This document shows positions 17,868-43,707 of a stretch of DNA of 64,000 nt, piece by piece. Source of the stretch: Obrimoposthia wandeli (taxonomy: Eukaryota); NCBI GenBank assembly GCA_977020255.1, contig CDROCS010004052.1:1-64000 (forward strand). Direction: 5' to 3'. The number at the start of each line of letters is the position of its first letter. The stretch's first letter is position 1. Made by a program: the position numbers and the translations under genes. The notes below the pieces were generated by a model. It worked only from the letters and a program-made list of their open reading frames with translations. It was not told the origin of the DNA and searched no databases.

Positions 17868-17935
17868 GCATAGTTTTTTTTAATCCTATATAGAAATTAA
17901 TACTATTTTATTAATATAAAAATTCACTCTATGCT
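17868..17935 (+). promoter_or_regulatory. LysR box + sigma70 promoter A of the hin-like regulon
   Basis: GCATAGTTTTTTTTAATCC (17868-17886), 14 nt, TACTATTTTAT; -35 TTTATT (17907-17912), 17 nt, -10 TATGCT (17930-17935). Confidence 0.7.
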
Positions 17936-18009
17936 CCTTTACTCCACTTTCTTTTGATTTACATCAAACTTAACTCAGCGATGTGAATAATAACAGCATA
18001 GGGTTTTCA

Positions 18010-19167
18010 ATGGCGCAGCAGCTCACTCTTGATATATTAAAACGGCTCATATCTTTTGATACCACCAGCTGTCATTCAAATTTGGCACTGATGCACTATA
18101 TCCAAGGATATTTGCACAGCTATGCTATCAGCAGCCAATTAATCTATAACGAACAGCGCACTAAAGCGAACCTCTACGCAACCATAGGCCCCGTAAATAA
18201 AGCGGGCATCATGCTTTCAGGGCACACCGATACCGTGCCTGTTACCGGCCAAAACTGGGAGAGCGACCCTTACCAGCTATCCCAGCGCAAAGGGCGACTA
18301 TATGGTCGCGGCAGCTGCGACATGAAAGGTTTTATAGCCACTGCATTAGCTGCAATACCCCAAATAGACACTAAAAAACTACACACACCTTTGCACCTTG
18401 CCTTCTCTTACGATGAAGAAATAGGCTGTATAGGCGTACGCCGCATGATTGATATGTTAGCCCAGCACCCTATTAAACCTTCTATTTGTATTATTGGCGA
18501 GCCAACTTCGATGCAAGTGGTGACAGCGCATAAAGGTAAAATTGCAGCGCGCGTCACTGTACAGGGCAAGGAATGCCATTCAGGTATGGCGCCCCAAGGG
18601 GTAAATGCAATTAACTACGCAGCAAGGCTGATTGTTTGGCTAGAGCAACTGGCGCTAGAGAAGCAAAACACCGGCCCATTTGATCCAAGCTACGACATTC
18701 CATACAGCACCGTGCATACCGGAACAATCAAAGGGGGTAATGCACTCAACATTGTTCCTAAACTCGCTACTTTCGATTTTGAAATCCGTAACATAGGAGC
18801 CGAATCTAGCACCCCTTTATTAGAGCGTTTACACACTTACGCTGATCAACTCAGTGCGCAAATGCAAACAATTGATAGCCACTGCCATATAGATATACAA
18901 ATAATTACACAGTACCCAGGGCTCACCACAACCAGAGATACTCATGCTATCGATTTTGTTAAAAAGCTTAGCGCAAACAACAGCATTGCCAGCATCAACT
19001 TTGGCACTGAAGGGGGTCTATTTAGCTCGCAACTAGGTGTAGCCACGCTGGTTTGCGGCCCTGGCAGTATGGATCAAGGGCACAAACCTAATGAGTTTGT
19101 CAGCCTGACACAAATAGAGCATTGCGAAGCATTTATGAGTCGTTTGATTAATGAAATAAGCGACTGA
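18010..19167 (+). CDS. argE: Acetylornithine deacetylase-like M20 amidohydrolase (ArgE family); probable hin pathway hydrolase
   Basis: LSGHTDTVP, GRGSCDMKGF, YDEEIGC, IIGEPT and GHKPNEF motifs. Alternative start GTG 17983. Confidence 0.85.
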   Translation: MAQQLTLDILKRLISFDTTSCHSNLALMHYIQGYLHSYAISSQLIYNEQRTKANLYATIGPVNKAGIMLSGHTDTVPVTGQNWESDPYQLSQRKGRLYGRGSCDMKGFIATALAAIPQIDTKKLHTPLHLAFSYDEEIGCIGVRRMIDMLAQHPIKPSICIIGEPTSMQVVTAHKGKIAARVTVQGKECHSGMAPQGVNAINYAARLIVWLEQLALEKQNTGPFDPSYDIPYSTVHTGTIKGGNALNIVPKLATFDFEIRNIGAESSTPLLERLHTYADQLSAQMQTIDSHCHIDIQIITQYPGLTTTRDTHAIDFVKKLSANNSIASINFGTEGGLFSSQLGVATLVCGPGSMDQGHKPNEFVSLTQIEHCEAFMSRLINEISD

Positions 19168-19269
19168 TACCGAACCGCTTTATCTGGATAAAAATGCGTA
19201 TTTAAGTAAGCGCTGCATCCTATCGTATTGCATCAGCTGACAATAAAATAAAAAAACCAGGAGGAAACT

Positions 19270-20694
19270 ATGCCCAACACATTCGCCCCTACTACGCAAT
19301 CAAGCGCGAGTAGCCCGCCCGTCAATAGCGGTTTTCGCCGCACTTTAGGCCTCGTATCACTACTCGCTGTCTCTGTGGGATTAGTTGTCTCGCAAGGGGT
19401 GATGGTACTGATGTTACAAGGTGCGGGCATTGCTGGTTTGGGCTTTATTATCCCTCTTATTATCGGCTATGTGCTGGCGCTGACTTATATCAGCTCTTTT
19501 TCTGAACTGTCTTTAATGATCCCAAGAGCGGGTGGCCTCAGTAGCTATACCGAGGTGGCTATTGGGCATTTTCCGGCGATTCTTGCGGTGTTCTCAGGTT
19601 ACGTTGTGGTTACTATGTTTGCAGTATCTGCAGAGCTATTGCTGGTCGATTACATTATTAACAAAATTTACCCTGGGATTTTCCCTAAGTACACTGTTGG
19701 CTTTAGCTTACTGGCACTCTTCACGTTATTAAACCTAAGGGGCATCGATGTCTTTGCCAAACTGCAATCGGTTTTAGCCTTTGTAATGATCGTTTTATTA
19801 TTAGCCATGGGCTTAGGTGCTGTTGGTGGTGTGGTTGAGCCAAAACCTGCAGGCATCGATTTAACAAGTAATTGGAATATGCTTGGCACTGAGGTGATTA
19901 CGTTAGTTGCATTGGCTATTTGGGGCTATGTAGGCGCTGAGTTTGTCTGCCCATTGGTAGAAAATGCCAAAAACCCGCAACGCGATATCCCTCGCTCAAT
20001 GACCATTGGTGTCACAGTTATTTTTGTCACTATTGCGCTGTACTGCCTAGGCGCACTCTATTATGTTCCCGCTGCAGATTTAGCGTCATCATCCCTACCA
20101 CATTACGATTTCGCCAAAGCAGCCTTTGGCGATGCAGGGCTTATTTTAATCGCTGTAGCCTCCGTCGCTGCTACTTGCAGTACGGTAAATACTTGTTTAG
20201 CGTCCATCCCGAGAATGCTCTATGGAATGGCACAAAATGGCCAAGTATTTCCACAGTTAAAAACACTCTCTAAGCGTACCAATACCCCTTGGGTTGCAGT
20301 GCTATTTGTCGCTGCCATTACTGGTATCCCTATGGTGTTACTCGCCGACCAGCCTGAATCTATCGGCTTACTGCTTATTTCTGCGGCAATTGCCTGGTTA
20401 TTTGCCTACATCATCACCCACATTAATGTTATTGCATTGCGCAAGCGCTATCCCAATATTGCACGACCTTACAAAACGCCTTTTTATCCGCTGCCACAAG
20501 TGGTTGGTATAGCTGGCATGTTATACGCAGTGGTTTACGCATCTCCTGCACCGGAGCTGAGCGCACAAATTTATGGTGCAGCTGGCGTCGTATTGGCTGT
20601 CGTGGCAATAATTGCTGCTATTTGGGTCAAACTGGTGATGAAGAAAAATCTGTTTACCCCAGAGCCGATCGAAAAAGCACTCGAGGCAAAATAG
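19270..20694 (+). CDS. APC family amine permease, HinA-like (candidate histamine permease)
   Basis: About 12 TM; GLVVSQGVMVLMLQG, FSELSLMIPRAGGLSSYTEVAIGHFPAIL and RPYKTPFYPLPQ, which I recall as close to the Pseudomonas HinA/PA0220 family. Confidence 0.82.
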   Translation: MPNTFAPTTQSSASSPPVNSGFRRTLGLVSLLAVSVGLVVSQGVMVLMLQGAGIAGLGFIIPLIIGYVLALTYISSFSELSLMIPRAGGLSSYTEVAIGHFPAILAVFSGYVVVTMFAVSAELLLVDYIINKIYPGIFPKYTVGFSLLALFTLLNLRGIDVFAKLQSVLAFVMIVLLLAMGLGAVGGVVEPKPAGIDLTSNWNMLGTEVITLVALAIWGYVGAEFVCPLVENAKNPQRDIPRSMTIGVTVIFVTIALYCLGALYYVPAADLASSSLPHYDFAKAAFGDAGLILIAVASVAATCSTVNTCLASIPRMLYGMAQNGQVFPQLKTLSKRTNTPWVAVLFVAAITGIPMVLLADQPESIGLLLISAAIAWLFAYIITHINVIALRKRYPNIARPYKTPFYPLPQVVGIAGMLYAVVYASPAPELSAQIYGAAGVVLAVVAIIAAIWVKLVMKKNLFTPEPIEKALEAK

Positions 20695-20828
20695 CGAGTT
20701 TTATACCGCTTTGCATCAGTATTATTAATGCTAAAGAGAAAAATTAAATATTTTATTTATGCCTAAAAAGTACCTAACGTACGCGTACTTAACTTGCGGC
20801 TAAAATTGACACTAGGAGCTAACTGAAA

Positions 20829-22223
20829 ATGTCCGACAATAACAATATCGATATGCAACAAGTATGGCAACAAGACAAAGACCACTACATTCATCCATGG
20901 ACAGACTTTTCTACCTTTAAAGAAACGGGGTCTATGATCCTTGCAGACAGTGATAATGTACATGTCAAAGATGGTGAAGGACGCGAGTATCTTGATGGTA
21001 TCGGTGGATTATGGTGTGTAAATATCGGCTATGCACGCAAAGAAATGGCCGATGCTATAGCAGAGCAAATCTGTAAAATCCCCTACTTCTCTAGCTTTGG
21101 TCATCACACAACGATACCGGCAGCACAATTATCTGCAAAATTAGCGGAACTGGCACCCGGTAATTTAAACCACGTATTTTACGGCTGTGGTGGCTCTGTT
21201 GCCAATGACACTGCGGTCAGAATCATTCATTTTTACTTTAACCAATTGGGTCAAAAGTCGAAGAAAAAGATTATCTCGCGCATTGATGGCTACCACGGTA
21301 GTACCTATATGGCGATGTCGATTACTGGTGTAAAGTTTGATCACATTGGTTTTGATATTGATAATCAATTAGTGCACCACATCTCTTGCCCTAATCCATA
21401 TCGCCGCCCTGATGAGCAAACAATTGCAGCATTTTGCGATGAAAAAGTCCAAGAGCTAGAAGATAAAATCCTCGAGCTAGGCCCTGACAATGTTGCCGCG
21501 TTTTTCGCAGAACCGATACTCGGAGCCGGGGGCGTTATTGTACCACCAGAAGGTTATCATAAACGCACTTTGGCTGTGTGTCGTAAGTATGGTGTACTCT
21601 ACGTATCGGATGAGGTAGTTACAGCGTTTGGTCGTTTAGGTCACATGTTCGCATCAGAAGATGAGTTTGGTATTGTGCCCGATATGATCACTTGCGCAAA
21701 AGGCCTAACATCGGGTTACTTGCCATTAGGAGCGACTATTCTCTCTGAGGATATTTACAACGTCATTAGTAAGCCACAAGCGGATGGTGCCATTTTTACC
21801 CATGGTTACACTTACTCAGGCCACCCGGTGAGCTGTGCAGCTGCTAATAAAAACATTGAAATAATGGAGCGGGAAAATATTTGCGGCCATGTTAAAGACA
21901 TGGGTGCTTATTTTGAAGCGCAAGTTAAGAGCTTAATCGATTTACCAATCGTCGGCGACGTACGCGGCAGAAAGTTCATGATGTGCATAGAAAATGTGGC
22001 TAACAAGCAAACTAAAGAGCTCATCGACTCTGATGCTAAAGTAGGTAATCGCATTGCAGATCACTGCCAAGAACGCGGCTTAATTGTACGCCCATTGGCA
22101 CATATGAATGTTCTTTCACCACCGTTGACACTCACTAAGGAAAATATAGATTTCCTAGTAAAAACATTACGTGAAAGTATTATAGCCACAACCGAAGATC
22201 TTAAAAAAGCAGGCTTCTTGTAA
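20829..22223 (+). CDS. Class III PLP aminotransferase, HinC-like (candidate histamine:pyruvate aminotransferase)
   Basis: YLDGIGGLWCVNIG, YHGST, SDEVVTAFGR, PLP lysine CAKGLTSGY and HGYTYSGHP motifs. Confidence 0.85.
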   Translation: MSDNNNIDMQQVWQQDKDHYIHPWTDFSTFKETGSMILADSDNVHVKDGEGREYLDGIGGLWCVNIGYARKEMADAIAEQICKIPYFSSFGHHTTIPAAQLSAKLAELAPGNLNHVFYGCGGSVANDTAVRIIHFYFNQLGQKSKKKIISRIDGYHGSTYMAMSITGVKFDHIGFDIDNQLVHHISCPNPYRRPDEQTIAAFCDEKVQELEDKILELGPDNVAAFFAEPILGAGGVIVPPEGYHKRTLAVCRKYGVLYVSDEVVTAFGRLGHMFASEDEFGIVPDMITCAKGLTSGYLPLGATILSEDIYNVISKPQADGAIFTHGYTYSGHPVSCAAANKNIEIMERENICGHVKDMGAYFEAQVKSLIDLPIVGDVRGRKFMMCIENVANKQTKELIDSDAKVGNRIADHCQERGLIVRPLAHMNVLSPPLTLTKENIDFLVKTLRESIIATTEDLKKAGFL

Positions 22224-24627: not shown

Positions 24628-24705
24628 TTAGACTCACTCAAAAGTAAAAAAACACATTGATTACTACTAAATATCAAGCTAATAGCCAATTTTTCCAGCG
24701 TATAC

Positions 24706-26615: not shown

Positions 26616-26684
26616 TCACAAAAAAACGATCACTATTTGTATATGAGTATCACTACCGACTGTTTAATTTAAGGTGAAAGACAA

Positions 26685-27230: not shown

Positions 27231-27362
27231 CGTTTGCGATATAGCTGAAGTACAAAACAAAAAACCTTTATTTATCGACAGATTCAAGGACTGGCTATTT
27301 ATTGTTCCAATGTTAAAGTACTTTAAAATCATCTTAATATAACCTTTATTGGGGGCTTAACT

Positions 27363-33545: not shown

Positions 33546-35426
33546 TTAGACGGCGTTGCTATGAACCGCATTAGTGCGAACTCGCCTCGGGGCCGTCATA
33601 TTTTCTACACTGAGAATATCTTCAAGCGCTTCAGGGGTTAGTAAGCCCTCTAGCAAGACTAAATCTCGCACACTGTGATTCCCCTCTATTGCTTGTTTAG
33701 CCAATCGAGTTGCATTGTCATATCCGATGTAAGGATTCAGTGCCGTGATAATTCCTATGCTGTTGTTCACCATTTTCAAGCAGTGCTCGCGATTAGCACT
33801 AATCCCTTTAATGCACTTGCTCGCAAGGGTTTCTATTGCTCTTGTTTGCAAGCGCAACGACTGTAATACATTAAATGCGATCACAGGTTCCATCACATTT
33901 AACTGCAACTGTCCCGCCTCTGCTGCCATTGTTATCGCAATGTCATTACCTATCACTTGAAACGCTACTTGGTTAACCATTTCAGGAATCACAGGGTTCA
34001 CTTTACCCGGCATTATTGAGCTACCTGGCTGCATTGCTGGTAAATTAATCTCTCGAAAGCCTGCGCGCGGGCCACTTGAAAGCAAGCGTAAGTCATTACA
34101 TATTTTTGATAACTTCACCGCATTGCGTTTAAGCACGCTTGAGAAGGTCACAAATGCGCCCATATCAGAGGTGGCTTCTATTAAGTTTTTGGCAGCAACC
34201 ATCTCTTTGCCACTAATTTGGCACAACTCTTCAATCACCAAAGATGAGTATTCAGGATCTGTATTTATCCCCGTACCTATCGCCGTGGCTCCCATATTTA
34301 TTTCACGAAAATACTGCACAACATCTTTTGCTTCTTGAATATCTTCTTTTACTGTGGAGTACCAAGCATCAAACTCTTGGCCTAATGTAATCGGCACTGC
34401 ATCTTGTAGCTGTGTACGACCCATTTTGACAACAGAGCAAAACTCCACCGCTTTTTGTTTAAACTGGTAACACAGTGCTGATAACGCACTCACGTATTCT
34501 TGATGACTAAGTAAAATACTCAGGCGAATAGCGGTAGGGTAAGCATCGTTGGTCGATTGCGATAAGTTGACATGGTTATTAGGGTGTAAATGTTGATAAT
34601 CTGCCCGCCGGTGGCCAAGAATTTCTAACGCGCGATTAGCAATCACTTCGTTCGCGTTCATATTGGTCGAAGTGCCTGCCCCTCCTTGAATCACATCGAC
34701 AACAAAATGAGAGTGCCATTCACCTGCGATAATTTCATCGCACGCTTGGTCAATAGCTGCTGCTTTAGGCGGCTCCAATATACCGAGTTTACAGTTGGCT
34801 TTTGCCGCGGCTTTTTTCACCATAGCCAATGCATTCACTAGCTGAGGAAAATGTTTAAGCTTGATTCCTGTAATTGCAAAATTTTCAGTAGCACGTAACG
34901 TTTGTATACCGTACAACGCACTATTAGGGACTTCTCGCTCACCGAGTAAGTCTTTTTCGATGCGAACCGTCTCTGTGCGCGGTACATTTTTATGACAGCG
35001 CTGACGGTTCATTTCTAAGTGTAGTAGCCATGCTGCAAGCACTGCCGTGCGATCTGATAACAGCATCCACTGCTCAAGAGAGCAGCGCTCTATCTGTAAT
35101 AAAACCAGCTCAGACAACGCCTGGTATTGAACACGAATGTCTGAATTTTCTTCATCATTATGGGACTCAGTTATCGGTTTAGTTGTCGTTTTAATTAGCA
35201 ACAGCGGGTTGCACAATGCAGGGGCTTCAATGACTAACTCAGTCAAATGGGTGAAGGCTATAGTCCCTTGTATTAACACCGTTAATTTTTGCGGATGACT
35301 CACAAAAGTGCAACCTTTAGAGAGCGGCTCTAGCTGGCATATGTCTAACAACGTGTTCCATTCGGTATCTTTCAAGTGGGTGCATTTAAGCACCGCTTTA
35401 ATTAATTTCTTATTATTGGCAATCAT
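33546..35426 (-). CDS. aspA: Aspartate ammonia-lyase with an N-terminal extension of about 150 aa (HinI-like)
   Basis: RIEKDLLG, YGIQTLRA, QGGAGTSTNMNANEV, KMGRTQLQDAVP and signature GSSIMPGKVNP. Start ATG 35426 (SD AAGAGAAG). Confidence 0.9.
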   Translation of the reverse strand: MIANNKKLIKAVLKCTHLKDTEWNTLLDICQLEPLSKGCTFVSHPQKLTVLIQGTIAFTHLTELVIEAPALCNPLLLIKTTTKPITESHNDEENSDIRVQYQALSELVLLQIERCSLEQWMLLSDRTAVLAAWLLHLEMNRQRCHKNVPRTETVRIEKDLLGEREVPNSALYGIQTLRATENFAITGIKLKHFPQLVNALAMVKKAAAKANCKLGILEPPKAAAIDQACDEIIAGEWHSHFVVDVIQGGAGTSTNMNANEVIANRALEILGHRRADYQHLHPNNHVNLSQSTNDAYPTAIRLSILLSHQEYVSALSALCYQFKQKAVEFCSVVKMGRTQLQDAVPITLGQEFDAWYSTVKEDIQEAKDVVQYFREINMGATAIGTGINTDPEYSSLVIEELCQISGKEMVAAKNLIEATSDMGAFVTFSSVLKRNAVKLSKICNDLRLLSSGPRAGFREINLPAMQPGSSIMPGKVNPVIPEMVNQVAFQVIGNDIAITMAAEAGQLQLNVMEPVIAFNVLQSLRLQTRAIETLASKCIKGISANREHCLKMVNNSIGIITALNPYIGYDNATRLAKQAIEGNHSVRDLVLLEGLLTPEALEDILSVENMTAPRRVRTNAVHSNAV

Positions 35427-35562
35427 TTCGCTTCTCTTACACCTAGTGGTGTATTGATACGGTTGAAAAGAGCGCACTAAATTTCATTGCCATCACCCAA
35501 AATGGTTATCACTCAACTGCTGGTATTCAGGTGATAGTCAATAAAGTCAGTGGCGCACCCTC

Positions 35563-35630
35563 AGCCTAAGAAGTGACGTTGCATATGTAAAATATTATAA
35601 ATATGTCATATGCATCAGTTTTTTTAATGC
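35563..35630 (-). promoter_or_regulatory. LysR box + sigma70 promoter B of the hin-like regulon
   Basis: 19-mer GCATCAGTTTTTTTAATGC (35612-35630). On the minus strand: 14 nt, TAATATTTTAC (35597-35587); -35 TTTACA, 17 nt, -10 TAGGCT (35568-35563). Confidence 0.7.
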
Positions 35631-35800
35631 AAAAAAATAAACAGAGCCAGTGCCCCGTGTTTCTGAGGGCTTGGCACTTTTATAACGCACTTTTAATGCA
35701 ATTTTTTAACGATTTTCTACCAAGCAACTCCGCAATAAGACCTAACTGGATAATCAAACACCTAGCTGCCACCGCTTAATTCAAACGGCGATGAACTTTA

Positions 35801-36778
35801 TCAAAGATCTTTATCAACTGGTTTTGTATCAACAGGATCCAAATGTTTATAAAATCGCTGATCAGTAAACACTGATTTCGCCAATTCAGCGGCCCTCTCT
35901 TTCAAGGTTTTAATGAATGCATCTGCGATTGGGGTCAACCGAAAGCGCGATATTTTAGCGACACCTAAGCGTAGTGGACGCAGCTTACCACGCAGTGGAA
36001 TAGCGACTATTTCACTGCCATCTAGCGCTAAGTTATTTGCCAGTGGTGTGTTAAACAACGAATAACCAAACCCATTAGCAACCAAGCCACGCACCATCGC
36101 TAAAGATTGCGCACGATAGGCAAAATTCGGTTCTAAATCTTGGCTTAAAAATAACGAAAAGAAATATTCACGGCTCATTGGCCAGTCTAATAGCACCATC
36201 GGATACTGAGCTAATTCATCCAGTGACAGCTCTTCGCAGTGCGCCAGTGGGTGGTCTTTAGCTAACACCGCATAAGGGGGAAACTCAATAACCGGCTCAA
36301 ATTCAATGTCTGTCGGTAACTGTAAATCATAGGTTAACGCCAACTCGTAACGCCCATCCATCAAGCTTTGAATAATATCTTTTTGGTGGCTTTCATCACA
36401 CTGAATATCGACACCTGGATAGGTGTCGATAAACTTCTTCATCAACGATGGCAGTAAAATTGGAGTGAAAGTAGGGAAGCTTACAATACGTAAAGAGCCG
36501 GCAATATCTTCCCCTAAGCTAGTGGCGTATTGACCTAAGCTCTCTGCATCGAGCAGGAGTTGTTTCGACTTAAGAATAAACTGGCGTCCAGCAGGTGTGA
36601 GTGACAACCCTTGTGCATGATGCCTTACAAACAGCTGTAAACCAGTGGCTTGCTCTAAGTGTAAAATGGCAGAAGAAATTGACGGTTGAGACACATAGAG
36701 CTCCTCAGCCGCACGCGTAACACTGCTGTGCTCCCCGGCTTTAACAAAATAGCGTAAATGTTTTAATGTGAAGTGCAT
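35801..36778 (-). CDS. LysR family regulator, HinK-like
   Basis: HTH LRYFV...YVSQPSISSAI..LE...LFVRHHAQGLSLTPAG; divergent from the monooxygenase operon. Confidence 0.9.
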   Translation of the reverse strand: MHFTLKHLRYFVKAGEHSSVTRAAEELYVSQPSISSAILHLEQATGLQLFVRHHAQGLSLTPAGRQFILKSKQLLLDAESLGQYATSLGEDIAGSLRIVSFPTFTPILLPSLMKKFIDTYPGVDIQCDESHQKDIIQSLMDGRYELALTYDLQLPTDIEFEPVIEFPPYAVLAKDHPLAHCEELSLDELAQYPMVLLDWPMSREYFFSLFLSQDLEPNFAYRAQSLAMVRGLVANGFGYSLFNTPLANNLALDGSEIVAIPLRGKLRPLRLGVAKISRFRLTPIADAFIKTLKERAAELAKSVFTDQRFYKHLDPVDTKPVDKDL

Positions 36779-36926
36779 AATAAAATCTCAGGTTATAACC
36801 AGCACTCTGATGAGCGCCTGCATTAATAATTATTTACTAAAAACCATACTAGATTCGAAATAATAATTCAAAGGCCATCAAAAATCATTCGTGTCCCTGT
36901 CAATCTTCACACTTATATTTTCCTCT

Positions 36927-36994
36927 GCATAGTTTTTTATAATCCTTTTGCTCAGTTAATAATATTTTACCAATCCAGAGAGTTTTTCTACTCT
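36927..36994 (+). promoter_or_regulatory. LysR box + sigma70 promoter C of the hin-like regulon
   Basis: GCATAGTTTTTTATAATCC (36927-36945), 14 nt, TAATATTTTAC (36960-36970); -35 TTTACC, 17 nt, -10 TACTCT. Confidence 0.75.
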
Positions 36995-37134
36995 GATCCA
37001 TCTGACCTAGCAGGGAATGTGCAGCGTTGCTCTAATATGCGCAAACATCAGCGGCCAAGTTTTCACTGGCGCACATTCAAGAGGTCTGATCCAGCTCTCA
37101 TTGAGAGACAGAACAACTAAAACAGGATAAAAAC

Positions 37135-38385
37135 ATGACAGTTGAAAACATAGACACTTTGGTAATTGGAGCTGGGCAAGCTGGCGTCGCTATGAGTGAA
37201 CACTTAAGCAAGTTACAAGTACCTCATATCGTATTAGAGCGCGATCGCATTGCCGAGCGCTGGCGCACTGGCCGCTGGGATTCGCTAGTCGCCAATGGAC
37301 CCGCTTGGCACGACCGCTTCCCCGGTTTAGAGTTTGAGGGGGTTGATGATAATGCCTTTGCACCAAAAGAGCGTGTAGCAGACTATTTTGTAGAATACGC
37401 CAAAAAATTTAAAGCACCCATACGCACCGGGGTTGCTGTGATAAAAGTACAGCGCAATGCTAACCAAGCGGGCTTCACGGTAGAGACATCTCAAGGGGTG
37501 ATCAACGCCCAGCGCGTCGTCGCGGCAACCGGACCTTTTCAACGCCCTATTATCCCGGCAATTGCACCGCAAGATGATCGTTTGCATCAAATACACTCTG
37601 CTGATTATCGCAACCCAGAACAACTGCCTGAAGGTGGGGTAATGGTTATCGGTGCAGGATCTTCCGGTGTGCAAATTGCCGATGAGCTGCGCCGCTCTGG
37701 TCGAGAAGTGCATTTATCTGTTGGCCCTCATGATCGCCCCCCTCGCAGTTATCGCAACCGAGATTTTGTCTGGTGGTTAGGTGTATTAGGCGAGTGGGAT
37801 GCAGCGGCCATGAAGCCCGGTACTGAGCATGTCACTATCGCTGTTAGTGGTGCTCACGGTGGACACACTATCGATTTTAGAAACCTTGCAAATCAAGGGA
37901 TCAACTTAGTCGGGCACACCGACTCATTTAACAATGGCGTGGTTAAGTTTCAGGGTGATTTAGTAGATAACATCAACCGTGGTGATGAAAACTATAACAG
38001 CCTACTCGATGCCGCAGATGCTTACATTGAGCGCAACGGTTTGGATCTTCCACTGGAGCCACAGGCACGCCAAACTTACACTGACGCTGAATGCATCAGT
38101 AATCCAATTCGTGAGCTAAACCTTGAAGCCGCCGGAATAAATAGCATTATTTGGGCGACGGGATTTGCACTAGATTACAGCTGGATGCAAGTAGATGCCT
38201 TTGATGATAAAGGTAAACCCGCTCACCAACGCGGTGTCTCAACTGAATCTGGTATCTATTTTATTGGCTTGCCTTGGCAGTCACGTCGCGGCTCATCATT
38301 TATCTGGGGAGTATGGCACGATGCAAAGTACGTAGCGGATCATATCCAAACCCAGCGCACTTATTTAGCTTACACAGATGCCTAA
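37135..38385 (+). CDS. Flavin-dependent monooxygenase (FMO-like), HinF-like (candidate imidazole-acetate monooxygenase)
   Basis: FAD motif VIGAGQAG, IHSADYRNP, NADPH motif VIGAGSSGVQIA and IIWATGF. Confidence 0.85.
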   Translation: MTVENIDTLVIGAGQAGVAMSEHLSKLQVPHIVLERDRIAERWRTGRWDSLVANGPAWHDRFPGLEFEGVDDNAFAPKERVADYFVEYAKKFKAPIRTGVAVIKVQRNANQAGFTVETSQGVINAQRVVAATGPFQRPIIPAIAPQDDRLHQIHSADYRNPEQLPEGGVMVIGAGSSGVQIADELRRSGREVHLSVGPHDRPPRSYRNRDFVWWLGVLGEWDAAAMKPGTEHVTIAVSGAHGGHTIDFRNLANQGINLVGHTDSFNNGVVKFQGDLVDNINRGDENYNSLLDAADAYIERNGLDLPLEPQARQTYTDAECISNPIRELNLEAAGINSIIWATGFALDYSWMQVDAFDDKGKPAHQRGVSTESGIYFIGLPWQSRRGSSFIWGVWHDAKYVADHIQTQRTYLAYTDA

Positions 38386-38458
38386 TTTCTTCACCTTAAA
38401 TAGATGTTCTTTATAAGTAGTGCTCGCGCTGCTTTATTTTCCCAATTCGGAGTGATAA

Positions 38459-38872
38459 ATGCCAACACATACCCGTATCCGCATGTTTAATACCAAAGAA
38501 ACCTACCCAAACCAAAATTTAGATAATGACCTATGCCAAGCAGTGCGCGCCGGTAATACCGTTTACGTGCGCGGCCAAGTTGGCACTGATTTTGATGGCA
38601 ATTTAGTCGGCCTTGGCGATCCTGGCGCCCAAGCAGAACAAGCCATGAAAAACGTTAAACAGCTCTTAGAAGAGGCGGGATCTGACATAAGCCATGTTGT
38701 CAAAACCACCACCTATATCACAGATCCACGCTATCGCGAGGATGTGTATCGTGAAACCGGCAAATGGTTTAAAGGGGTTTACCCAATCTCCACTGGCATT
38801 GTAGTACAAGCACTGGCACAGCCGCAGTGGTTGATGGAAATAGACATCATCGCCGTTATTCCAGATAAGTAA
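38459..38872 (+). CDS. RidA/YjgF family enamine deaminase, HinL-like
   Basis: VYVRGQVG, QAEQAMKNV, STGIVVQALA and LMEIDIIA motifs. Confidence 0.9.
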   Translation: MPTHTRIRMFNTKETYPNQNLDNDLCQAVRAGNTVYVRGQVGTDFDGNLVGLGDPGAQAEQAMKNVKQLLEEAGSDISHVVKTTTYITDPRYREDVYRETGKWFKGVYPISTGIVVQALAQPQWLMEIDIIAVIPDK

Positions 38873-38897
38873 ACCCAGCGTATTTTTAGGAGTCACT

Positions 38898-39569
38898 ATG
38901 ACATTTTCAGTTGCAGGCGTATGTCCCGATACAGGCATGGTGGGTTGTGCGATTACCTCATCGAGCATTTGCGTAACCAGCCGCTGTGCATTCACTCGCG
39001 CTAATACCGGCGTTGCACTCACTCAAAATATAACCAACCCAGATTTAGGCCCGCTGGCACTCGATTTAATGCAGCAAGGACAAAGCAGTGCGCAAATTAT
39101 GCAGGCATTAGCCAGCGCCGATAGCGACGTACAGTGGCGTCAACTAGGGATCTTAGCTCTGGATGGCCAAAGCAGCACCTTTAGCGGAGCACAAGCATTG
39201 GGTATACACGCCACTGCCAGTGGCAAAAATTGCATCGCTATGGGTAACTTATTGGCAAACGAGCAAGTGCCTCAAGCCATGATAGACAGTTTTGAAAACA
39301 GCCGTGGTCATCTCGCTGAGCGCTTAATTAGCGCACTGCATGCGGGCAAAAAAGCCGGTGGTGAGCTAGGCCCTATTCACTCAGCGGGTATTAACGTAAA
39401 CGCCCAAGCCGATTGGCCAGTGGTCGACTTGCGCGTAGATTGGCACGAACAACCCATCGATCAATTGACACAATTATGGGCCTTATACGAGCCGCAAATG
39501 CAGGCATATATCACCCGTGCCACGGACCCTGCCAATGCCGAATCTTACGGCGTACCCGGCGACGAATAG
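38898..39569 (+). CDS. DUF1028 Ntn-hydrolase-fold protein (hin pathway hydrolase homologue)
   Basis: N-terminal nucleophile start MTFSV; TQNITNP, RQLG, GNLLAN, DLRVDWH and PSYGVPGDE-like terminus (AESYGVPGDE). Confidence 0.85.
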   Translation: MTFSVAGVCPDTGMVGCAITSSSICVTSRCAFTRANTGVALTQNITNPDLGPLALDLMQQGQSSAQIMQALASADSDVQWRQLGILALDGQSSTFSGAQALGIHATASGKNCIAMGNLLANEQVPQAMIDSFENSRGHLAERLISALHAGKKAGGELGPIHSAGINVNAQADWPVVDLRVDWHEQPIDQLTQLWALYEPQMQAYITRATDPANAESYGVPGDE

Positions 39570-39590
39570 CAACTCAAAAACTAAATAATA

Positions 39591-39629
39591 GAGTGTAGTC
39601 GCTCTGATATTCGCAGCAGCACTACACTC
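39591..39629 (+). terminator. Hairpin after the DUF1028 gene
   Basis: GAGTGTAGT...ACTACACTC, 9-bp inverted repeat. Confidence 0.45.
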
Positions 39630-39678
39630 AAAGCTCCTAACAGGCTGTTTTATAGGTAACTATTTAAAGGCGCCATTT

Positions 39679-39746
39679 GGATAAGTTTTATCTATCCCAA
39701 AAGCACGATTTTAATATTTTACTAATACGCAGCAAAACCCTAACGT
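39679..39746 (+). promoter_or_regulatory. LysR box + sigma70 promoter D of the hin-like regulon
   Basis: GGATAAGTTTTATCTATCC (39679-39697), 14 nt, TAATATTTTAC (39712-39722); -35 TTTACT, 17 nt, -10 TAACGT. Confidence 0.7.
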
Positions 39747-39869
39747 TTTAATGCAGTCATTCATCATTTAGTAAAGCGCAGGCGCTTAAAACGGGTAATT
39801 ACTCTTGATAATTTAGGCAACGCCTAATTCATCTCTAATAAGTATAATAATTACAGAGAAAACTAAGCT

Positions 39870-40940
39870 ATGAAGCACGCTATAAGTATAAAAAACGTCA
39901 GCAAGTTTTACGGTAGCTACCGTGCAATTAAAGACATCTCTTTCGACATACAAGACAATGAATTTTTTACCTTACTAGGCCCTAGTGGCTGCGGTAAAAC
40001 CACTTTATTAAGAATGATTGCCGGTTTTGAAATGCCCAGCGGCGGTGTCATCAAACTACATGGTACAGATATTCAATCACTGCCGGCCCACCAGCGACGT
40101 GTGAATACGGTCTTTCAAAACTATGCGCTTTTCCCGCACATGAACCTTGCTCAAAACATCGCCTTTGGCTTACAAATGCTTAACTGGCCTAGTGATAAAG
40201 TGGCCAGTCGTGTCGATGAAATGCTAGAGCTAGTACACATGCAAGCCTTCGCATCGCGTATGCCTGCTGCGCTTTCAGGTGGACAACAACAGCGTATTGC
40301 ACTGGCCCGTGCGCTGGCCCCGCAACCTGAGGTTCTGTTACTTGATGAACCGCTCAGCGCGCTGGATTTAAAACTGCGCCAATCGATGCGTGATGAGTTA
40401 CAACAGCTGCAACGCGACACTGGGATCACGTTCATTTTCGTTACCCACGACCAAGAAGAAGCGCTGGCCATGTCCGATAGGATTTGTGTACTTGCTCAAG
40501 GCGAGGTACAGCAACTTAGCAGCCCCAGCGACATTTATGAAAACCCTACTAACAAATTTGTTGCTGACTTTATCGGCGAAACTAACTTTTTACCGGTCTC
40601 TCTTGAAAGTAACGGCTCTGACATGGTTGTGGTTAACAATCCATTAGGGGTAGCGCTAAGTTTACCTGCTGCTGATTACAGCACATCTCAAGAGGCAACT
40701 ATGTCATTGCGCCCAGAGAAAATTTCAATCAATACACAAGGGCTAGAAGTTAATCTCACAGGAGAAGTAGTACACCGTACTTATATGGGCGGTTACACCC
40801 ATTACAAAGTACGTACAGCTAACGCAACTGAGTTACGCGTATCAAAGCGTAATACGATCAGCAATGACATTGAATACAGTATCAACCAACAGGTAAACAT
40901 TGGCTTTAGTAAAGCCTCTGTCAGAGTGCTGTGCCAATGA
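39870..40940 (+). CDS. ABC transporter ATP-binding protein, PotA family
   Basis: GPSGCGKTT, LSGGQQQRIALAR, LLDEP and FVTHDQ motifs. Confidence 0.92.
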   Translation: MKHAISIKNVSKFYGSYRAIKDISFDIQDNEFFTLLGPSGCGKTTLLRMIAGFEMPSGGVIKLHGTDIQSLPAHQRRVNTVFQNYALFPHMNLAQNIAFGLQMLNWPSDKVASRVDEMLELVHMQAFASRMPAALSGGQQQRIALARALAPQPEVLLLDEPLSALDLKLRQSMRDELQQLQRDTGITFIFVTHDQEEALAMSDRICVLAQGEVQQLSSPSDIYENPTNKFVADFIGETNFLPVSLESNGSDMVVVNNPLGVALSLPAADYSTSQEATMSLRPEKISINTQGLEVNLTGEVVHRTYMGGYTHYKVRTANATELRVSKRNTISNDIEYSINQQVNIGFSKASVRVLCQ

Positions 40941-41815
40941 ATAAATTCAATTGGAATTTTTGGGGGTTACTCCCAGCATATGTTGTGATGTCATTATTAA
41001 TGATCATTCCGCTGCTGATTATTTTCTACGTGTCACTCATGACATCTGATCCGTACGGTGGATTTAAAGCAATATTTTCACTGCAATCTTACCATCAAAT
41101 TTTGTACACCTCTGACTGGGACGACAACTTAGTACTCAATTTACAATACTTAAAAATCATTGGCCGTACCTTAGTTTTGTCTGGTGTAACCGCCATCATC
41201 TGCCTGTTAATTAGCTTCCCTGTGGCCTACTATATTTCTCGTCAGAGTCACAACATGAAAACACTGTTGCTCTATTTAGTCACCCTGCCTTTTTGGGTCA
41301 GCATGGTCGTACGCGTTTATGCTTGGGTACTGATTTTAAGCAACGATGGAGTACTTGAAAACGGGTTGCGATTTTTTGGTTTAATTGGCGATATCGACAG
41401 CTTACTTTACAACAACACCGCCATGATGGTCGGCATGGTATACACCTATATCCCACTGATGATTTTACCCATCTACGCCAGCATAGAGAAACTTGATAGT
41501 CGTTTAATAGAAGCCGCTAGTGATTTATACAGTAATCGTTTACAGACATTATCCAAAGTAATTATTCCATTGTGTAAACCTGGAATTGTCGCCGGCTTTA
41601 TCTTAGTTTTAGTCCCCTGTTTAGGTACGGTTTTAGAGCCTATGCTACTGGGCGGCGGAAAAACGATGATGCTGGGTAATTTAATTCAAAACCAATTTGG
41701 CGTCGCTAGAAACTGGTCATTTGGGGCGAGCTTAACCGTTTTGTTATTGTGCATCGTACTGGCATTTTTAATGCTGCAAGCACGCAGATCCACTGCCGCT
41801 AAGGAGCCAGCATGA
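40937..41815 (+). CDS. ABC transporter permease, PotB-like
   Basis: TLPFWVSMVVR and IEAASDL (EAA) motifs; ATGA overlap with the ATPase gene. Confidence 0.9.
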   Translation: MNKFNWNFWGLLPAYVVMSLLMIIPLLIIFYVSLMTSDPYGGFKAIFSLQSYHQILYTSDWDDNLVLNLQYLKIIGRTLVLSGVTAIICLLISFPVAYYISRQSHNMKTLLLYLVTLPFWVSMVVRVYAWVLILSNDGVLENGLRFFGLIGDIDSLLYNNTAMMVGMVYTYIPLMILPIYASIEKLDSRLIEAASDLYSNRLQTLSKVIIPLCKPGIVAGFILVLVPCLGTVLEPMLLGGGKTMMLGNLIQNQFGVARNWSFGASLTVLLLCIVLAFLMLQARRSTAAKEPA

Positions 41816-42621
41816 GTATTAACGCACTGTTTAAAAAAAATCACGATGCAAAACACTATCCAGGTTTTGGGGCAGTGGGCATCGTATTCTTTACCTTTCT
41901 CTACTTGCCAATACTGGTGATAGTTGCCTATTCATTTAACAGCAACCGTATTGTTTCGGTGTGGCAAGATTTTTCATGGCAGTGGTACGCCAGTGCCCTG
42001 CAAAATGATGGTTTGCTCAACGCATTACACGTGTCACTCACTGTCGCGTTTTTTGCGACATTGATTGCCACAGCCATTGCTATTGCAGCGGCACTGGTTT
42101 TAGCAAGAGGTAAAAATGTAAAGCACGCCAAGCTCTCTGAAGGGGTAGTTAATCTCCCCTTGATGCTACCTGAAATTGTTTTCGCAGTGGCTATTTTGAT
42201 CCTGTTCTCACAGCTGGGTATACAAAGCGGAATGCTAAAGCTCATTTTAGCGCACAGCGCATTTTGTATTCCTTTCGCTTTTTTACCGATTCGCGCCAGG
42301 TTACAGGGCATGAATAACAATTTAGAACAGGCCGCTCAAGATCTATACGCCACGCCATTGGTTACGTTTAGGCGTATCACACTGCCTTTAATTGCACCGG
42401 GCATATTTGCTGGCGCCATGCTCAGTTTTGTCATATCTATGGACGATTTTATCACCAGTAATATCGTATCCGGCGGGGGTGCTACCACCTTGCCTGTATA
42501 TATATTTTCACTGGTTAAACAGGGAGTGTCTCCTGAACTTAACGCTATCTCTACTTTAATTATGGCGGCCTCCCTACTAATCGCAACGCCTTGTTGGCTA
42601 ATCGCCAAACGCAGTCGTTAA
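41812..42621 (+). CDS. ABC transporter permease, PotC-like
   Basis: FLYLPILV, EQAAQDL, ISMDDF and TLPVYIFS motifs. Confidence 0.9.
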   Translation: MSINALFKKNHDAKHYPGFGAVGIVFFTFLYLPILVIVAYSFNSNRIVSVWQDFSWQWYASALQNDGLLNALHVSLTVAFFATLIATAIAIAAALVLARGKNVKHAKLSEGVVNLPLMLPEIVFAVAILILFSQLGIQSGMLKLILAHSAFCIPFAFLPIRARLQGMNNNLEQAAQDLYATPLVTFRRITLPLIAPGIFAGAMLSFVISMDDFITSNIVSGGGATTLPVYIFSLVKQGVSPELNAISTLIMAASLLIATPCWLIAKRSR

Positions 42622-42678
42622 GCAAACCTTTAACGCATTTAACATTCACTAAATAGTAAAAATAAAAGGAAAAAATCT

Positions 42679-43707
42679 ATGAAGTCATGCAGTAAAATCC
42701 GTTTACTTGCCCTAAGTATCTCACTGGCAGCATCTGTTAACGCTCTGGGTAACACCCTTAACATCTATACATGGGCCGAAGCGCTAGACCCAACCTTGAT
42801 AGAGAAATTTCAGAGCGAAACTGGCATAAAAGTCACCTTAGATAGCTATACCTCAAACGAGGATTTATTAGCCAAGCTTAAGTCGGGCAGCAGTGATTAC
42901 GACGTGGTTTTCCCAAGCCAGCATTTTGTTAAAATAATGATTCAAGAAGGTCTACTCAAAAATATTGATGCTAAAAGCATGCAAGCATTTAAAGCAGTTG
43001 ACAGCCAATGGAAAAACCAATGGTGGGATGAGACATCACAATACTCAATTCCATTCGTTTACGGTACAGCGGGTTATGCGGTGAACCGTGATAAATACCA
43101 TGGCCCTGCCAACTCTTGGAAAGAGTTTTTTGAACCCACAGGTGCAGCAGCGGGTAACGTTGCTGTTTTTAGTACACCGGATGAGATTGTCCCTGCAGCG
43201 CAGCTGTATTTAGGTATCGATTTTTGTACCGAAAACAGTAGCGACATGAAAAAAGTATACCAATTACTTAAAAAGCAAAAAGAGCAAGTGGCTGTGTATA
43301 GCTCGGACAATATCAGTTCACGTATTGCCAGCGGAGAAGTAGTTATGCACAACTGGTGGGATGGCGATACCATGCGCGCACGTAAAAACAACAACGCACC
43401 TATTGAATACGCGCAGCCTAAAGAAGGCTTGGTTGGCTGGTTAGACTCTATGGTGGTGCCTAAAGGCTCACGCAATGTAGATAATGCTAAAACGTTTATT
43501 AACTGGATGAGCAAAAAAGATAACGCCACTACTGAATACAACTACTATGCGCACTCATCAGCTGTAGAAATTGACCAGAGTAAAGCGGTACACAAGCGGG
43601 AAAACTCACCTGAGATATTCCCAACTGCACCGATAAAATTCACCCGCGCTTGCTCTCCTATTGCACAAAAACTAGTCGATAAAGTTTGGACACAATTACT
43701 GCAATAA
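42679..43707 (+). CDS. ABC transporter substrate-binding protein, PotD/PotF-like
   Basis: Signal peptide; LNIYTW, FQSETGIKV, SNEDLLAKL, YDVVFPS, PKEG..W.D and A.TFINW motifs. Confidence 0.9.
   Translation: MKSCSKIRLLALSISLAASVNALGNTLNIYTWAEALDPTLIEKFQSETGIKVTLDSYTSNEDLLAKLKSGSSDYDVVFPSQHFVKIMIQEGLLKNIDAKSMQAFKAVDSQWKNQWWDETSQYSIPFVYGTAGYAVNRDKYHGPANSWKEFFEPTGAAAGNVAVFSTPDEIVPAAQLYLGIDFCTENSSDMKKVYQLLKKQKEQVAVYSSDNISSRIASGEVVMHNWWDGDTMRARKNNNAPIEYAQPKEGLVGWLDSMVVPKGSRNVDNAKTFINWMSKKDNATTEYNYYAHSSAVEIDQSKAVHKRENSPEIFPTAPIKFTRACSPIAQKLVDKVWTQLLQ

What the first reader, a model, noticed from the sequence alone, without database searches (positions are those of the whole stretch)
17868..43707. 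Complete hin-like histamine / imidazole-4-acetate catabolic gene set in a rearranged four-operon layout
In Pseudomonas putida U and P. aeruginosa, histamine is degraded to aspartate and fumarate. The pathway uses an APC permease (HinA), an aminotransferase (HinC), an aldehyde dehydrogenase (HinD), a flavin monooxygenase (HinF), a RidA protein (HinL), DUF1028 and ArgE-like hydrolases (HinH/HinG), an aspartase (HinI) and a LysR regulator (HinK). Every one of these families is here. The ArgE-like gene has moved in front of the permease and aminotransferase, and the dehydrogenase follows the aspartase. Standard annotation would scatter these as argE, puuC, aspA and 'polyamine' genes. Histamine use by a marine non-Pseudomonas gammaproteobacterium would matter for fish-associated niches.
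Basis: partly seen in the sequence, partly recalled or inferred. Interest (0 to 1): 0.85.

Follow-up and report, generated by a model that had tools for sequence, protein, structure and literature searches.

The report
Histamine/imidazole-acetate breakdown gene cluster, marine bacterium
This marine Oceanospirillales-type bacterium carries a complete, co-regulated gene set of the known Pseudomonas "Hin" type for breaking histamine down to fumarate. It is a real but fairly ordinary new member of a known pathway, and similar clusters turn up in many other marine bacteria.

Summary
All nine named families sit at the stated places, in two blocks (17868-22223 and 32037-43707) separated by about 9.8 kb that is not part of the set.

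- The FMO-RidA-DUF1028 operon and the M20 gene are 77/86/48/48 % identical to a P. putida hinFLHG-type operon.
- The LysR's best solved relative by far is PA0218 (HinK).
- The aminotransferase, aldehyde dehydrogenase and permease lie beside hinFLHG-like genes in every close relative examined (Osedax symbiont, Amphritea, Marinobacterium, Litchfieldella, Vibrio, Ca. Pseudothioglobus, an unnamed marine MAG). One partial exception is Motiliproteus, where FMO-RidA-DUF1028 are not within the fetched flank.

New here: a 44-nt bipartite element, G[CG]AT-N11-AT[CG]C … TTAATAATATTTTA, occurs exactly five times in the 64 kb. Each copy is upstream of a hin unit (M20-permease, aminotransferase, aspartase-ALDH, FMO-RidA-DUF1028, ABC importer). 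It recurs upstream of the matching operons in relatives and before hinF in P. putida and P. helleri. So there are five units plus the regulator, not four operons.

Not tested: direct comparison with Pseudomonas HinC/D/A, and any growth or induction.

Verdict: new member of a known kind. Non-Pseudomonas occurrence is common, not exceptional. The PotD-like importer and an orphan N-terminal extension of about 150 aa on the aspartase are the unusual extras.

The parts
17868..17911 (+). 44-nt bipartite promoter/operator element upstream of the M20-permease unit (GCAT-N11-ATCC ... TAATACTATTTTAT)
   Evidence: The first 20 nt (degenerate at one position) have only two matches in the window with up to 3 mismatches allowed, both exact (expected 0.05). 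Scores 40.1 with a PWM built only from relatives' sites.
17983..19167 (+). M20 amidohydrolase, HinG-like (predicted N-formyl-L-aspartate deformylase)
   Evidence: Pfam Peptidase_M20 + M20_dimer. 48 % identical to the M20 of the P. putida hinFLHG-type operon. NCBIfam profile matches that of P. putida HinG: PRK07522 534 vs 578 bits, TIGR01892 389 vs 396 bits.
19270..20694 (+). APC-family permease, candidate histamine transporter (HinA role)
   Evidence: AA_permease_2; no NCBIfam equivalog reached. 62-80 % identical permeases lie inside hin clusters of Litchfieldella, Vibrio, Amphritea, Marinobacterium and Motiliproteus.
20713..20756 (+). Promoter/operator element upstream of the aminotransferase
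   Evidence: PWM score 30.8 with the relatives-only matrix. Matching sites lie upstream of the aminotransferase in L004, L005, L017 and L088.
20829..22223 (+). Class-III (omega) aminotransferase, HinC role (histamine to imidazole-4-acetaldehyde)
   Evidence: Aminotran_3. NCBIfam PRK07036, 740 bits against a cut-off of 618. PLP lysine K291 is invariant. Homologues at 76 % identity or more always lie beside hin genes.
32037..33527 (-). NAD(P)-aldehyde dehydrogenase, HinD role (imidazole-4-acetaldehyde to imidazole-4-acetate)
   Evidence: Aldedh. PuuC model 659 bits, below its 850 cut-off. Best PDB relatives are AldA/KauB-type. 57-84 % identical ALDHs lie inside hin clusters. Starts 18 nt after the aspartase gene.
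33546..35429 (-). Aspartate ammonia-lyase (HinI role) with an N-terminal extension of about 150 aa and unknown fold
   Evidence: Passes TIGR00839 aspA, 704 bits against 681, on residues 172-631 of the long ORF. The likely start is the ATG at 35429. The extension is conserved in L003 and L004 and has no Pfam match.
35587..35630 (-). Promoter/operator element upstream of the aspartase-ALDH unit (GCAT-N11-ATGC dyad)
   Evidence: PWM score 33.3. Orthologous sites lie upstream of aspA in L003 and L004. A terminator-like hairpin at 35658-35641 separates it from lysR.
35801..36778 (-). LysR-type regulator, HinK-like
   Evidence: HTH_1 + LysR_substrate. Best PDB hits 3fzv/6m5f at 225 bits and about 41 % identity (hand count), against 95 bits for the next hit. 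39 % identical to the P. putida LysR beside hinG, which itself matches 3fzv at 544 bits.
36927..36970 (+). Promoter/operator element in the lysR-FMO divergent region
   Evidence: PWM score 40.6. Its box 2, TTAATAATATTTTAC, is identical to the one 83 nt upstream of hinF in the P. putida locus L001. The P. helleri locus L085 has TTAATAATATTTTAT.
37135..38385 (+). Flavin monooxygenase, HinF orthologue (imidazoleacetate 4-monooxygenase, EC 1.14.13.5)
   Evidence: Pyr_redox_3/FMO-like. 75-78 % identical to the FMO that heads hinFLHG-type operons in four Pseudomonas/Litchfieldella loci.
38459..38872 (+). RidA-family protein, HinL orthologue
   Evidence: Ribonuc_L-PSP. 84-86 % identical to the Pseudomonas/Litchfieldella HinL position.
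38898..39569 (+). DUF1028 hydrolase, HinH orthologue
   Evidence: DUF1028, 210 bits. 46-51 % identical to the Pseudomonas/Litchfieldella HinH position. The N-terminal MTFS is invariant.
39679..39722 (+). Promoter/operator element upstream of the ABC importer (weakest of the five)
   Evidence: PWM score 25.2, against a maximum of 24.1 in 100 random windows. The orthologous site lies upstream of the ABC operon in L003.
39870..43707 (+). PotABCD-like ABC importer: ATPase 39870-40940, permeases 40931-41815 and 41812-42621, periplasmic binding protein 42679-43707
   Evidence: ABC_tran+TOBE_2, BPD_transp_1 x2, SBP_bac_8. The SBP is PotD/SpuE-like but far below the equivalog cut-offs. Related ABC sets (ATPase 48-54 %) lie inside hin clusters of Roseibium and Rhodobacteraceae and in locus L089.

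Best explanation
This is a Hin-type regulon for using histamine, and its intermediate imidazole-4-acetate (ImAA), as a carbon and nitrogen source.

Proposed steps:
1. Histamine enters through the APC permease and/or the PotD-like ABC importer.
2. The class-III aminotransferase converts histamine to imidazole-4-acetaldehyde.
3. The aldehyde dehydrogenase oxidises that to ImAA.
4. The flavin monooxygenase (HinF) hydroxylates the ring.
5. The RidA protein (HinL) and the DUF1028 hydrolase (HinH) carry the ring-opened product to N-formyl-aspartate.
6. The M20 hydrolase (HinG) releases L-aspartate.
7. The aspartase (HinI role) yields fumarate and ammonium.
8. The divergently encoded HinK-like LysR regulator, probably sensing ImAA as in P. 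aeruginosa, controls five promoters that share a 44-nt bipartite element.

Shown here: the homology, the conserved clustering and the shared promoter element.

Inferred: the substrates, the division of labour between the two transporters, the effector, and that the LysR is the protein that binds the element.
For: 1. Gene-for-gene match to a P. putida FMO-RidA-DUF1028-M20 operon (77/86/48/48 %). The same holds for Pseudomonas sp., P. helleri and Litchfieldella. This is the published hinFLHG composition (PMC8231116; PMC6467879, Table 3).
2. The LysR's best solved relatives are 3fzv/6m5f (225 bits vs 95). The P. putida LysR beside hinG matches them at 544 bits.
3. Litchfieldella carries hinFLHG-LysR-ALDH-permease-aminotransferase, the PA0218-0221 order listed in PMC8231116. 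The window proteins are 55/69/62/77 % identical to the last four.
4. Every aminotransferase homologue of at least 76 % identity whose locus I examined lies beside hin genes: L003, L004, L005, L017, L086, L087, L088, L089.
5. Alphaproteobacterial clusters (Roseibium aggregatum, two Rhodobacteraceae) combine ABC x4, aminotransferase, M20, FMO, RidA, DUF1028 and either LysR or ALDH.
6. A PWM made only from relatives' sites finds exactly five sites in the window, all upstream of hin units, and nothing else at score 15 or more. Random windows reach 24.1 at most.
7. Box 2 of the element is identical before hinF of P. putida and nearly so in P. helleri, both G+C-rich genomes. PMC8231116 reports that HinK binds the hinF and hinD promoters at a shared motif.
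Against: - No Pseudomonas HinC, HinD or HinA sequence was available, so orthology of the upper pathway rests on context, not on reciprocal best hits.
- PMC8231116 notes that the two Pseudomonas 'HinA' proteins are only 17 % identical to each other, so the transporter role is not a conserved family.
- The ALDH is about as similar to AldA/KauB-type enzymes (about 580 bits) as to some hin-linked ALDHs (57 %).
- The LysR is only about 40 % identical to HinK.
- More distant aminotransferase homologues (45-71 %) mostly lie in non-hin contexts, often with a Pot-like ABC set, so the family as a whole is not histamine-specific.
- The published HinK operator sequence could not be read.
- No expression data exist for this organism.
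Confidence: 0.8

Rival explanations
1. Only the lower half (FMO, RidA, DUF1028, M20, aspartase, LysR) is a Hin-type ImAA pathway. The aminotransferase, ALDH, permease and ABC importer would be a general polyamine or omega-amine module (Spu/Puu-like) that merely lies nearby.
For: The aminotransferase family is broad: homologues of 45-71 % identity are mostly in non-hin contexts with Pot-like ABC genes. The ALDH's best NCBIfam model is PuuC, and the SBP's are PotD/PotF. The PDB neighbours of the SBP all bind polyamines.
Against: The aminotransferase, the aspartase-ALDH unit and the ABC operon each carry the same promoter element as the FMO operon, and this is conserved in relatives. All close aminotransferase homologues (76 % or more) are hin-linked. 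All Puu/Pot equivalog cut-offs are missed by a wide margin. No PuuA/PuuD-type gamma-glutamyl enzymes are in the region.
Confidence: 0.1
2. The cluster degrades a related compound rather than histamine itself, for example a methylated histamine, another imidazole or heteroaryl ethylamine, or imported ImAA only.
For: No experimental data exist for this organism. Transporters in related clusters vary (APC, Pot-like ABC, TRAP in Ca. Pseudothioglobus), which suggests different entry substrates. The ALDH resembles an indole-3-acetaldehyde dehydrogenase (5iuu; the enzyme name is from my memory).
Against: 75-78 % identity of the FMO and 84-86 % of RidA to the corresponding genes of Pseudomonas and Litchfieldella hinFLHG-type operons makes a change of core substrate unlikely. 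A PotD-like SBP and an APC permease fit a cationic amine.
Confidence: 0.07
3. The genes are a chance assembly of common families with no common function.
For: Each family (M20, APC, Aminotran_3, Aldedh, Lyase_1, LysR, ABC) is abundant in bacterial genomes, and the two halves are about 9.8 kb apart.
Against: The clustering is conserved in at least 12 genomes of two classes. The five-fold shared promoter element is found nowhere else in the 64 kb.
Confidence: 0.02

Closest known systems
Pseudomonas putida U Hin pathway (hin1 hinABCD, hin2 hinFLHG, hin3 hinIJ, hinK; de la Torre et al. 2018, as summarised in PMC8231116 and PMC6467879)
   Same: The same catalytic families are present for every step from histamine to fumarate. 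The FMO-RidA-DUF1028 order matches hinFLH, at 77/86/48 % identity to a P. putida locus, and the M20 is 48 % identical to the hinG position.
   Different: - The genes lie in two nearby blocks rather than four scattered loci.
- The M20 gene is detached from hinFLH and heads the permease-aminotransferase unit.
- The ALDH is co-transcribed with the aspartase.
- No HinB, HinJ or HinE counterparts are present.
- There is an extra PotABCD-like importer.
- The aspartase carries an N-terminal extension.
- The strain U proteins themselves were not compared.
Pseudomonas aeruginosa PAO1 HinK regulon (PA0218-0221 hinK-hinDAC, PA5390-5393 hinGHLF; Wang et al. 2021 via PMC8231116)
   Same: A LysR regulator of the same subfamily: the best PDB hit is 3fzv/6m5f. 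It is encoded next to catabolic genes, and several promoters share one motif, as reported for the hinD and hinF promoters.
   Different: Identity to the PA0218 structure is only about 41 %. The effector (ImAA) and binding to the element are inferred. Five promoters carry the element here.
Putative hin cluster of cheese-rind Brevibacterium (PMC6467879)
   Same: A non-Pseudomonas organism predicted to catabolise histamine, from homologues of HinA, D, F, G, H, I and L.
   Different: The Brevibacterium prediction rests on weaker HinC and HinK matches and proposes a histamine oxidase as an alternative first step. Here an aminotransferase inside the regulon fills that step.
Puu/Spu polyamine catabolism and the PotABCD/PotFGHI importers
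   Same: Same protein superfamilies for the aminotransferase, ALDH and ABC importer.
   Different: Equivalog cut-offs are not met: PuuC 659 < 850, PotD 163 < 582, PotF 139 < 636. There are no gamma-glutamylation genes. The genes share a promoter element with the imidazole-acetate genes.

Membership tests
Hin histamine/ImAA pathway | HinF-type flavin monooxygenase heading an FMO-RidA-DUF1028 operon | tested here: met
   75-78 % identity to the FMO of four Pseudomonas/Litchfieldella hinFLHG-type operons, with the same gene order.
Hin histamine/ImAA pathway | HinL (RidA) and HinH (DUF1028) orthologues | tested here: met
   RidA 84-86 % and DUF1028 46-51 % identical to the corresponding Pseudomonas/Litchfieldella genes. 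The N-terminal MTFS is invariant.
Hin histamine/ImAA pathway | HinG-type M20 hydrolase | tested here: met
   47-50 % identity to the M20 that ends Pseudomonas/Litchfieldella hinFLHG operons. The NCBIfam profile matches P. putida HinG. It carries its own copy of the shared promoter element.
Hin histamine/ImAA pathway | HinK-type LysR regulator | tested here: met
   Best PDB hit 3fzv/6m5f at 225 bits against 95 for the next. Identity is about 41 %, so this is subfamily-level support only. That these entries are PA0218/HinK is from my memory, supported by the 544-bit match of the P. putida LysR beside hinG.
Hin histamine/ImAA pathway | HinC aminotransferase and HinD aldehyde dehydrogenase orthologous to PA0221/PA0219 or to the strain U proteins | tested here: inconclusive
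   No Pseudomonas HinC/HinD sequence could be fetched. Indirect support: 77 % and 69 % identity to the genes occupying those positions in the Litchfieldella hinFLHG-K-D-A-C cluster, plus consistent hin linkage.
Hin histamine/ImAA pathway | Histamine transporter (HinA) | tested here: inconclusive
   An APC permease is present and is conserved in hin clusters (62-80 %). However, HinA is not a single family even within Pseudomonas (17 % identity, PMC8231116). No equivalog model was reached.
Hin histamine/ImAA pathway | Aspartate ammonia-lyase (HinI) | tested here: met
   TIGR00839 aspA, 704 bits against a cut-off of 681. In an operon with the ALDH, behind the shared element.
Hin histamine/ImAA pathway | Promoters sharing one operator motif | tested here: met
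   Five sites in the window. Orthologous sites occur in four relatives. Box 2 is identical before hinF of P. putida. Binding by the LysR was not tested.
Hin histamine/ImAA pathway | Growth on histamine or ImAA and induction by them | not testable with these tools
   No RNA runs hold this DNA. Culture work is needed.
Puu/Spu putrescine catabolism | PuuC, PotD and PotF equivalog scores, and presence of gamma-glutamyl enzymes | tested here: not met
   PuuC 659 < 850; PotD 163 < 582; PotF 139 < 636. No glutamine-synthetase-like or C26 peptidase genes in 14-46 kb.
ArgE acetylornithine deacetylase | TIGR01892 / PRK07522 score above cut-off | tested here: met
   389 vs 297.7 and 534 vs 412. The HinG-position protein of P. 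putida scores the same or higher (396, 578), so these models do not separate ArgE from HinG. Context argues for HinG.

The most novel reading that the evidence does not exclude
The Hin regulon would be a widespread marine trait rather than a Pseudomonas speciality. Clusters were found in Oceanospirillales, Halomonadaceae, Vibrio, Ca. Pseudothioglobus, an unnamed marine MAG whose aminotransferase also occurs in Tara data, and Roseobacter-group bacteria. In this lineage it would have gained two new parts: a high-affinity PotD-like histamine (or ImAA) ABC importer under HinK-type control, and an aspartase with an orphan N-terminal sensor-like domain of about 150 aa that gates the last step.
Probability: 0.25. 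Interest if true: 0.6.

Novelty: new member of a known kind. Interest (0 to 1): 0.4.

Why it matters
The cluster gives a testable, well-delimited prediction: an Oceanospirillales-type marine bacterium can grow on histamine or imidazole-4-acetate.

It corrects likely mis-annotations. The M20 passes NCBI's ArgE model. In relatives, the FMO is labelled "K+ transport flavoprotein" and the aminotransferase BioA-like or putrescine aminotransferase.

It also supplies a conserved 44-nt promoter element that can be used to find hin regulons in other genomes.

The comparative data suggest that histamine/ImAA catabolism is common among marine bacteria. That bears on biogenic-amine turnover around animals and decaying tissue, and on histamine removal in seafood. 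The pathway chemistry itself is already known.

Tried and rejected
- **Reciprocal best hits to PAO1 PA0219-0221 and P. putida U HinA/C/D.** Not possible. The aminotransferase homologue list stopped at 70 % identity with no Pseudomonas. The two primary papers are not held.
- **Literature on marine hin clusters or on the pathway intermediates.** Nothing relevant beyond PMC8231116 and PMC6467879.
- **Aspartase N-terminal extension.**
  - No Pfam match at E up to 10.
  - The word-indexed search of residues 1-160 found nothing.
  - The exhaustive phmmer search gave only two fragmentary, probably spurious hits.
  - The AlphaFold model had pLDDT 53, so I ran no fold search.
  - The Atlas hint of a cNMP-binding fold (0.92, 156 shared features) is only a lead.
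- **Consensus sigma-70 and terminator scans.** At chance level and uninformative, apart from one hairpin after lysR.
- **RNA-seq evidence.** Only the genome's own DNA sample holds this sequence.
- **LysE (31067-31708) as a pathway member.** Rejected: it has no promoter element and is absent from all related clusters.
- **The M20 as a genuine ArgE.** Rejected on context and on its promoter element.

Full report
**What is there.**
- Block A (+ strand): M20 hydrolase 17983-19167, APC permease 19270-20694, class-III aminotransferase 20829-22223.
- Block B: aldehyde dehydrogenase 32037-33527 (-), aspartate ammonia-lyase 33546-35429 (-), LysR regulator 35801-36778 (-).
- Block B continues divergently with flavin monooxygenase 37135-38385, RidA 38459-38872, DUF1028 38898-39569 and a four-gene PotABCD-like ABC importer 39870-43707.

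All genes are full length compared with homologues.

The stretch between the blocks (22273-31708) is not part of the set. It encodes a CHASE5-PAS-GGDEF-EAL protein, an SBP_bac_3 protein, an alpha/beta hydrolase, DinB, a saccharopine-dehydrogenase/DUF4166 protein, a PIN toxin and a LysE exporter. In the closest complete relative found, Osedax symbiont Rs1 (locus L003), the aminotransferase and the ALDH are only 2.6 kb apart. A different insert (AAA_15/RloB genes) sits there. The two blocks are therefore one ancestral cluster with a variable junction.

**Lower pathway.**
The FMO has thousands of close homologues. Pseudomonas proteins are 75-78 % identical to it. I fetched the neighbourhood of the P. 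putida protein, which showed FMO-RidA-DUF1028-M20 followed by a LysR gene. That is the composition published for hinFLHG (PMC8231116; PMC6467879, Table 3).
- The window proteins are 77, 86, 48 and 48 % identical to these four.
- Similar values hold for Pseudomonas sp. JM0905a, P. helleri and Litchfieldella qijiaojingensis.
- The DUF1028 proteins share an invariant N-terminal MTFS, and the RidA proteins are 84-86 % identical.
- The window's M20 and the P. putida HinG-position protein give the same NCBIfam picture. Both pass the 'acetylornithine deacetylase' models. Those models cannot separate ArgE from HinG, and routine annotation would indeed call this gene argE.

**Regulator.**
The LysR's best solved relatives are 3fzv and 6m5f (225 bits, about 41 % identity by my count of the printed alignment). 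The next hit, CysB, scores 95 bits. From memory, these two entries are P. aeruginosa PA0218, that is HinK. PMC8231116 confirms that a HinK structure was solved. The P. putida LysR beside hinG matches the same entries at 544 bits, and the Litchfieldella LysR in the hinK position matches at 207 bits. The window's regulator therefore belongs to the HinK subfamily, at a distance.

**Upper pathway and transport.**
I could not obtain Pseudomonas HinC, HinD or HinA, so I tested linkage instead.
- The aminotransferase passes NCBIfam PRK07036 (740 vs 618). It is not especially close to solved putrescine/polyamine transaminases.
- Nine other loci were examined whose aminotransferase is at least 76 % identical: Osedax symbiont, a Marinobacterium MAG, Motiliproteus, Amphritea sp. 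HPY, Litchfieldella, Vibrio sp., Ca. Pseudothioglobus, and locus L089 from an unnamed MAG (its aminotransferase also has Tara as a source). In all of them the gene lies beside hin genes.
- In Motiliproteus only the M20, permease, ALDH and aspartase are within the fetched flank; the FMO, RidA and DUF1028 genes are not.
- Litchfieldella has hinFLHG-LysR-ALDH-permease-aminotransferase, the PA0218-0221 order. The window proteins are 55/69/62/77 % identical to the last four.
- Three alphaproteobacterial loci (Roseibium aggregatum and two Rhodobacteraceae) combine a Pot-like ABC set (ATPase 53-54 %), aminotransferase, M20, FMO, RidA, DUF1028 and either LysR or ALDH.
- More distant aminotransferase homologues (45-71 %) are mostly in other contexts. 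It is the close clade, not the whole family, that is hin-linked.
- The ALDH misses the PuuC cut-off (659 < 850), and the SBP misses those of PotD and PotF.

**A shared promoter element.**
The regions upstream of the M20 and FMO genes share an exact 20-mer, degenerate at one position. It occurs twice in the window against 0.05 expected. Thirty bases downstream of its start lies a second box, TAATA[AC]TATTTTA. A matrix from three window sites found further sites.
- In the window: upstream of the aminotransferase and of the ABC operon.
- In relatives: upstream of the orthologous operons in L003, L004, L005 and L017.

A matrix built only from the relatives' sites recovers exactly five window sites: 17868, 20713, 35630(-), 36927 and 39679, with scores of 25-41.
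- Nothing else in the window reaches 15, and 100 random windows peak at 24.1.
- The relatives' sites were themselves found with a window-derived matrix, so the independent part of the evidence is their position upstream of orthologous operons.

The consensus is G[CG]AT-N11-AT[CG]C, a LysR-type T-N11-A dyad, then about 10 nt, then TTAATAATATTTTA with TATTTTA invariant.
- The same box 2 stands upstream of hinF in P. putida (identical 15-mer) and in P. helleri.
- It also stands before hinF and the ALDH in Litchfieldella, and before the aminotransferase in Vibrio.
- PMC8231116 reports that HinK binds the hinD and hinF promoters at a shared motif. I could not read that motif, so equating the two is an inference.

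The result is five units plus lysR, not four operons. A hairpin at 35658-35641 separates lysR from the aspartase promoter.

**Mechanism.**
The best reading is a Hin-type regulon. Histamine would enter through the APC permease and/or the PotD-like importer. The pathway would then run through transamination, oxidation to ImAA, FMO-dependent ring oxidation, RidA-, DUF1028- and M20-dependent conversion to aspartate, and deamination to fumarate. Control would be by the HinK-like regulator. Homology, synteny and the shared element are shown here. The substrates, the effector and the transporter roles are inferred. I put this at about 0.8.

**Unusual extras.**
The aspartase has an N-terminal extension of about 150 aa ahead of a complete AspA core. 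The likely start is the ATG at 35429.
- The extension is conserved in L003 and L004.
- It has no Pfam match.
- It has no credible homologue in an exhaustive search of 1.8 billion representatives.
- It folds poorly in AlphaFold, with pLDDT 53.
- A language-model hint points to a cNMP-binding fold. That is a lead only.

The ABC importer carries the promoter element here and in L003.

**Novelty.**
The pathway and regulator are known. Non-Pseudomonas occurrences have been predicted before (PMC6467879) and proved common among the marine lineages I sampled. This is a new member of a known kind. It adds a useful regulatory motif and two lineage-specific extras.

Noticed in passing
window 33546-35429 (-), residues 1-150: The aspartase carries an N-terminal extension of about 150 aa that is conserved in L003 and L004 (MNANNKKLIK... 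start). It has no Pfam match, no credible homologue in an exhaustive representative search, and a low-confidence AlphaFold model. The only lead is an Atlas feature hit to cNMP-binding proteins.
   Followed up: partly
window 22273-31708: A variable block lies between the two hin halves: CHASE5-PAS-GGDEF-EAL protein, SBP_bac_3, alpha/beta hydrolase, DinB, saccharopine-DH/DUF4166, a PIN toxin with a small upstream ORF (30327-30518), and LysE. The Osedax symbiont has an AAA_15/RloB pair at the same junction instead, so this is an insertion hot spot.
   Followed up: partly
window 18000-22000 and 32000-44000: The hin segments have 43-46 % G+C, against 38-39 % for most of the neighbouring and intervening DNA (one intervening window reaches 42 %). 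Possible horizontal origin; not analysed.
   Followed up: no
L007, L018, L021: Gammaproteobacterial and other proteobacterial MAG loci hold the aminotransferase (58-66 %), RidA and DUF1028 (plus M20 and LysR in some) but no HinF-type FMO within 10 kb. Gaps of 0.9-1.7 kb are unaccounted for and might hold a different oxygenase.
   Followed up: no
L087 (Ca. Pseudothioglobus) 6928-9934; L089 1860-5902: Transporters in hin clusters vary. A TRAP (DctPQM) system directly precedes the aminotransferase-FMO-RidA-DUF1028-M20 genes in Ca. Pseudothioglobus. A Pot-like ABC set is present in locus L089, from an unnamed MAG whose aminotransferase is indexed in 82 collection blocks and lists Tara among its sources.
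   Followed up: no
window 43827-45342: A second LysR gene (43827-44819, -) lies divergent from a MoaF-like gene (44917-45342, +), just past the ABC importer. It has no promoter element, and the Osedax locus has different genes after its ABC importer. It is probably unrelated to the cluster.
   Followed up: no
window 36824-36837: A second, weaker copy of box 2 (TAATAATTATTTAC) lies about 50 nt from the lysR start in the divergent region. It could be an autoregulation site.
   Followed up: no
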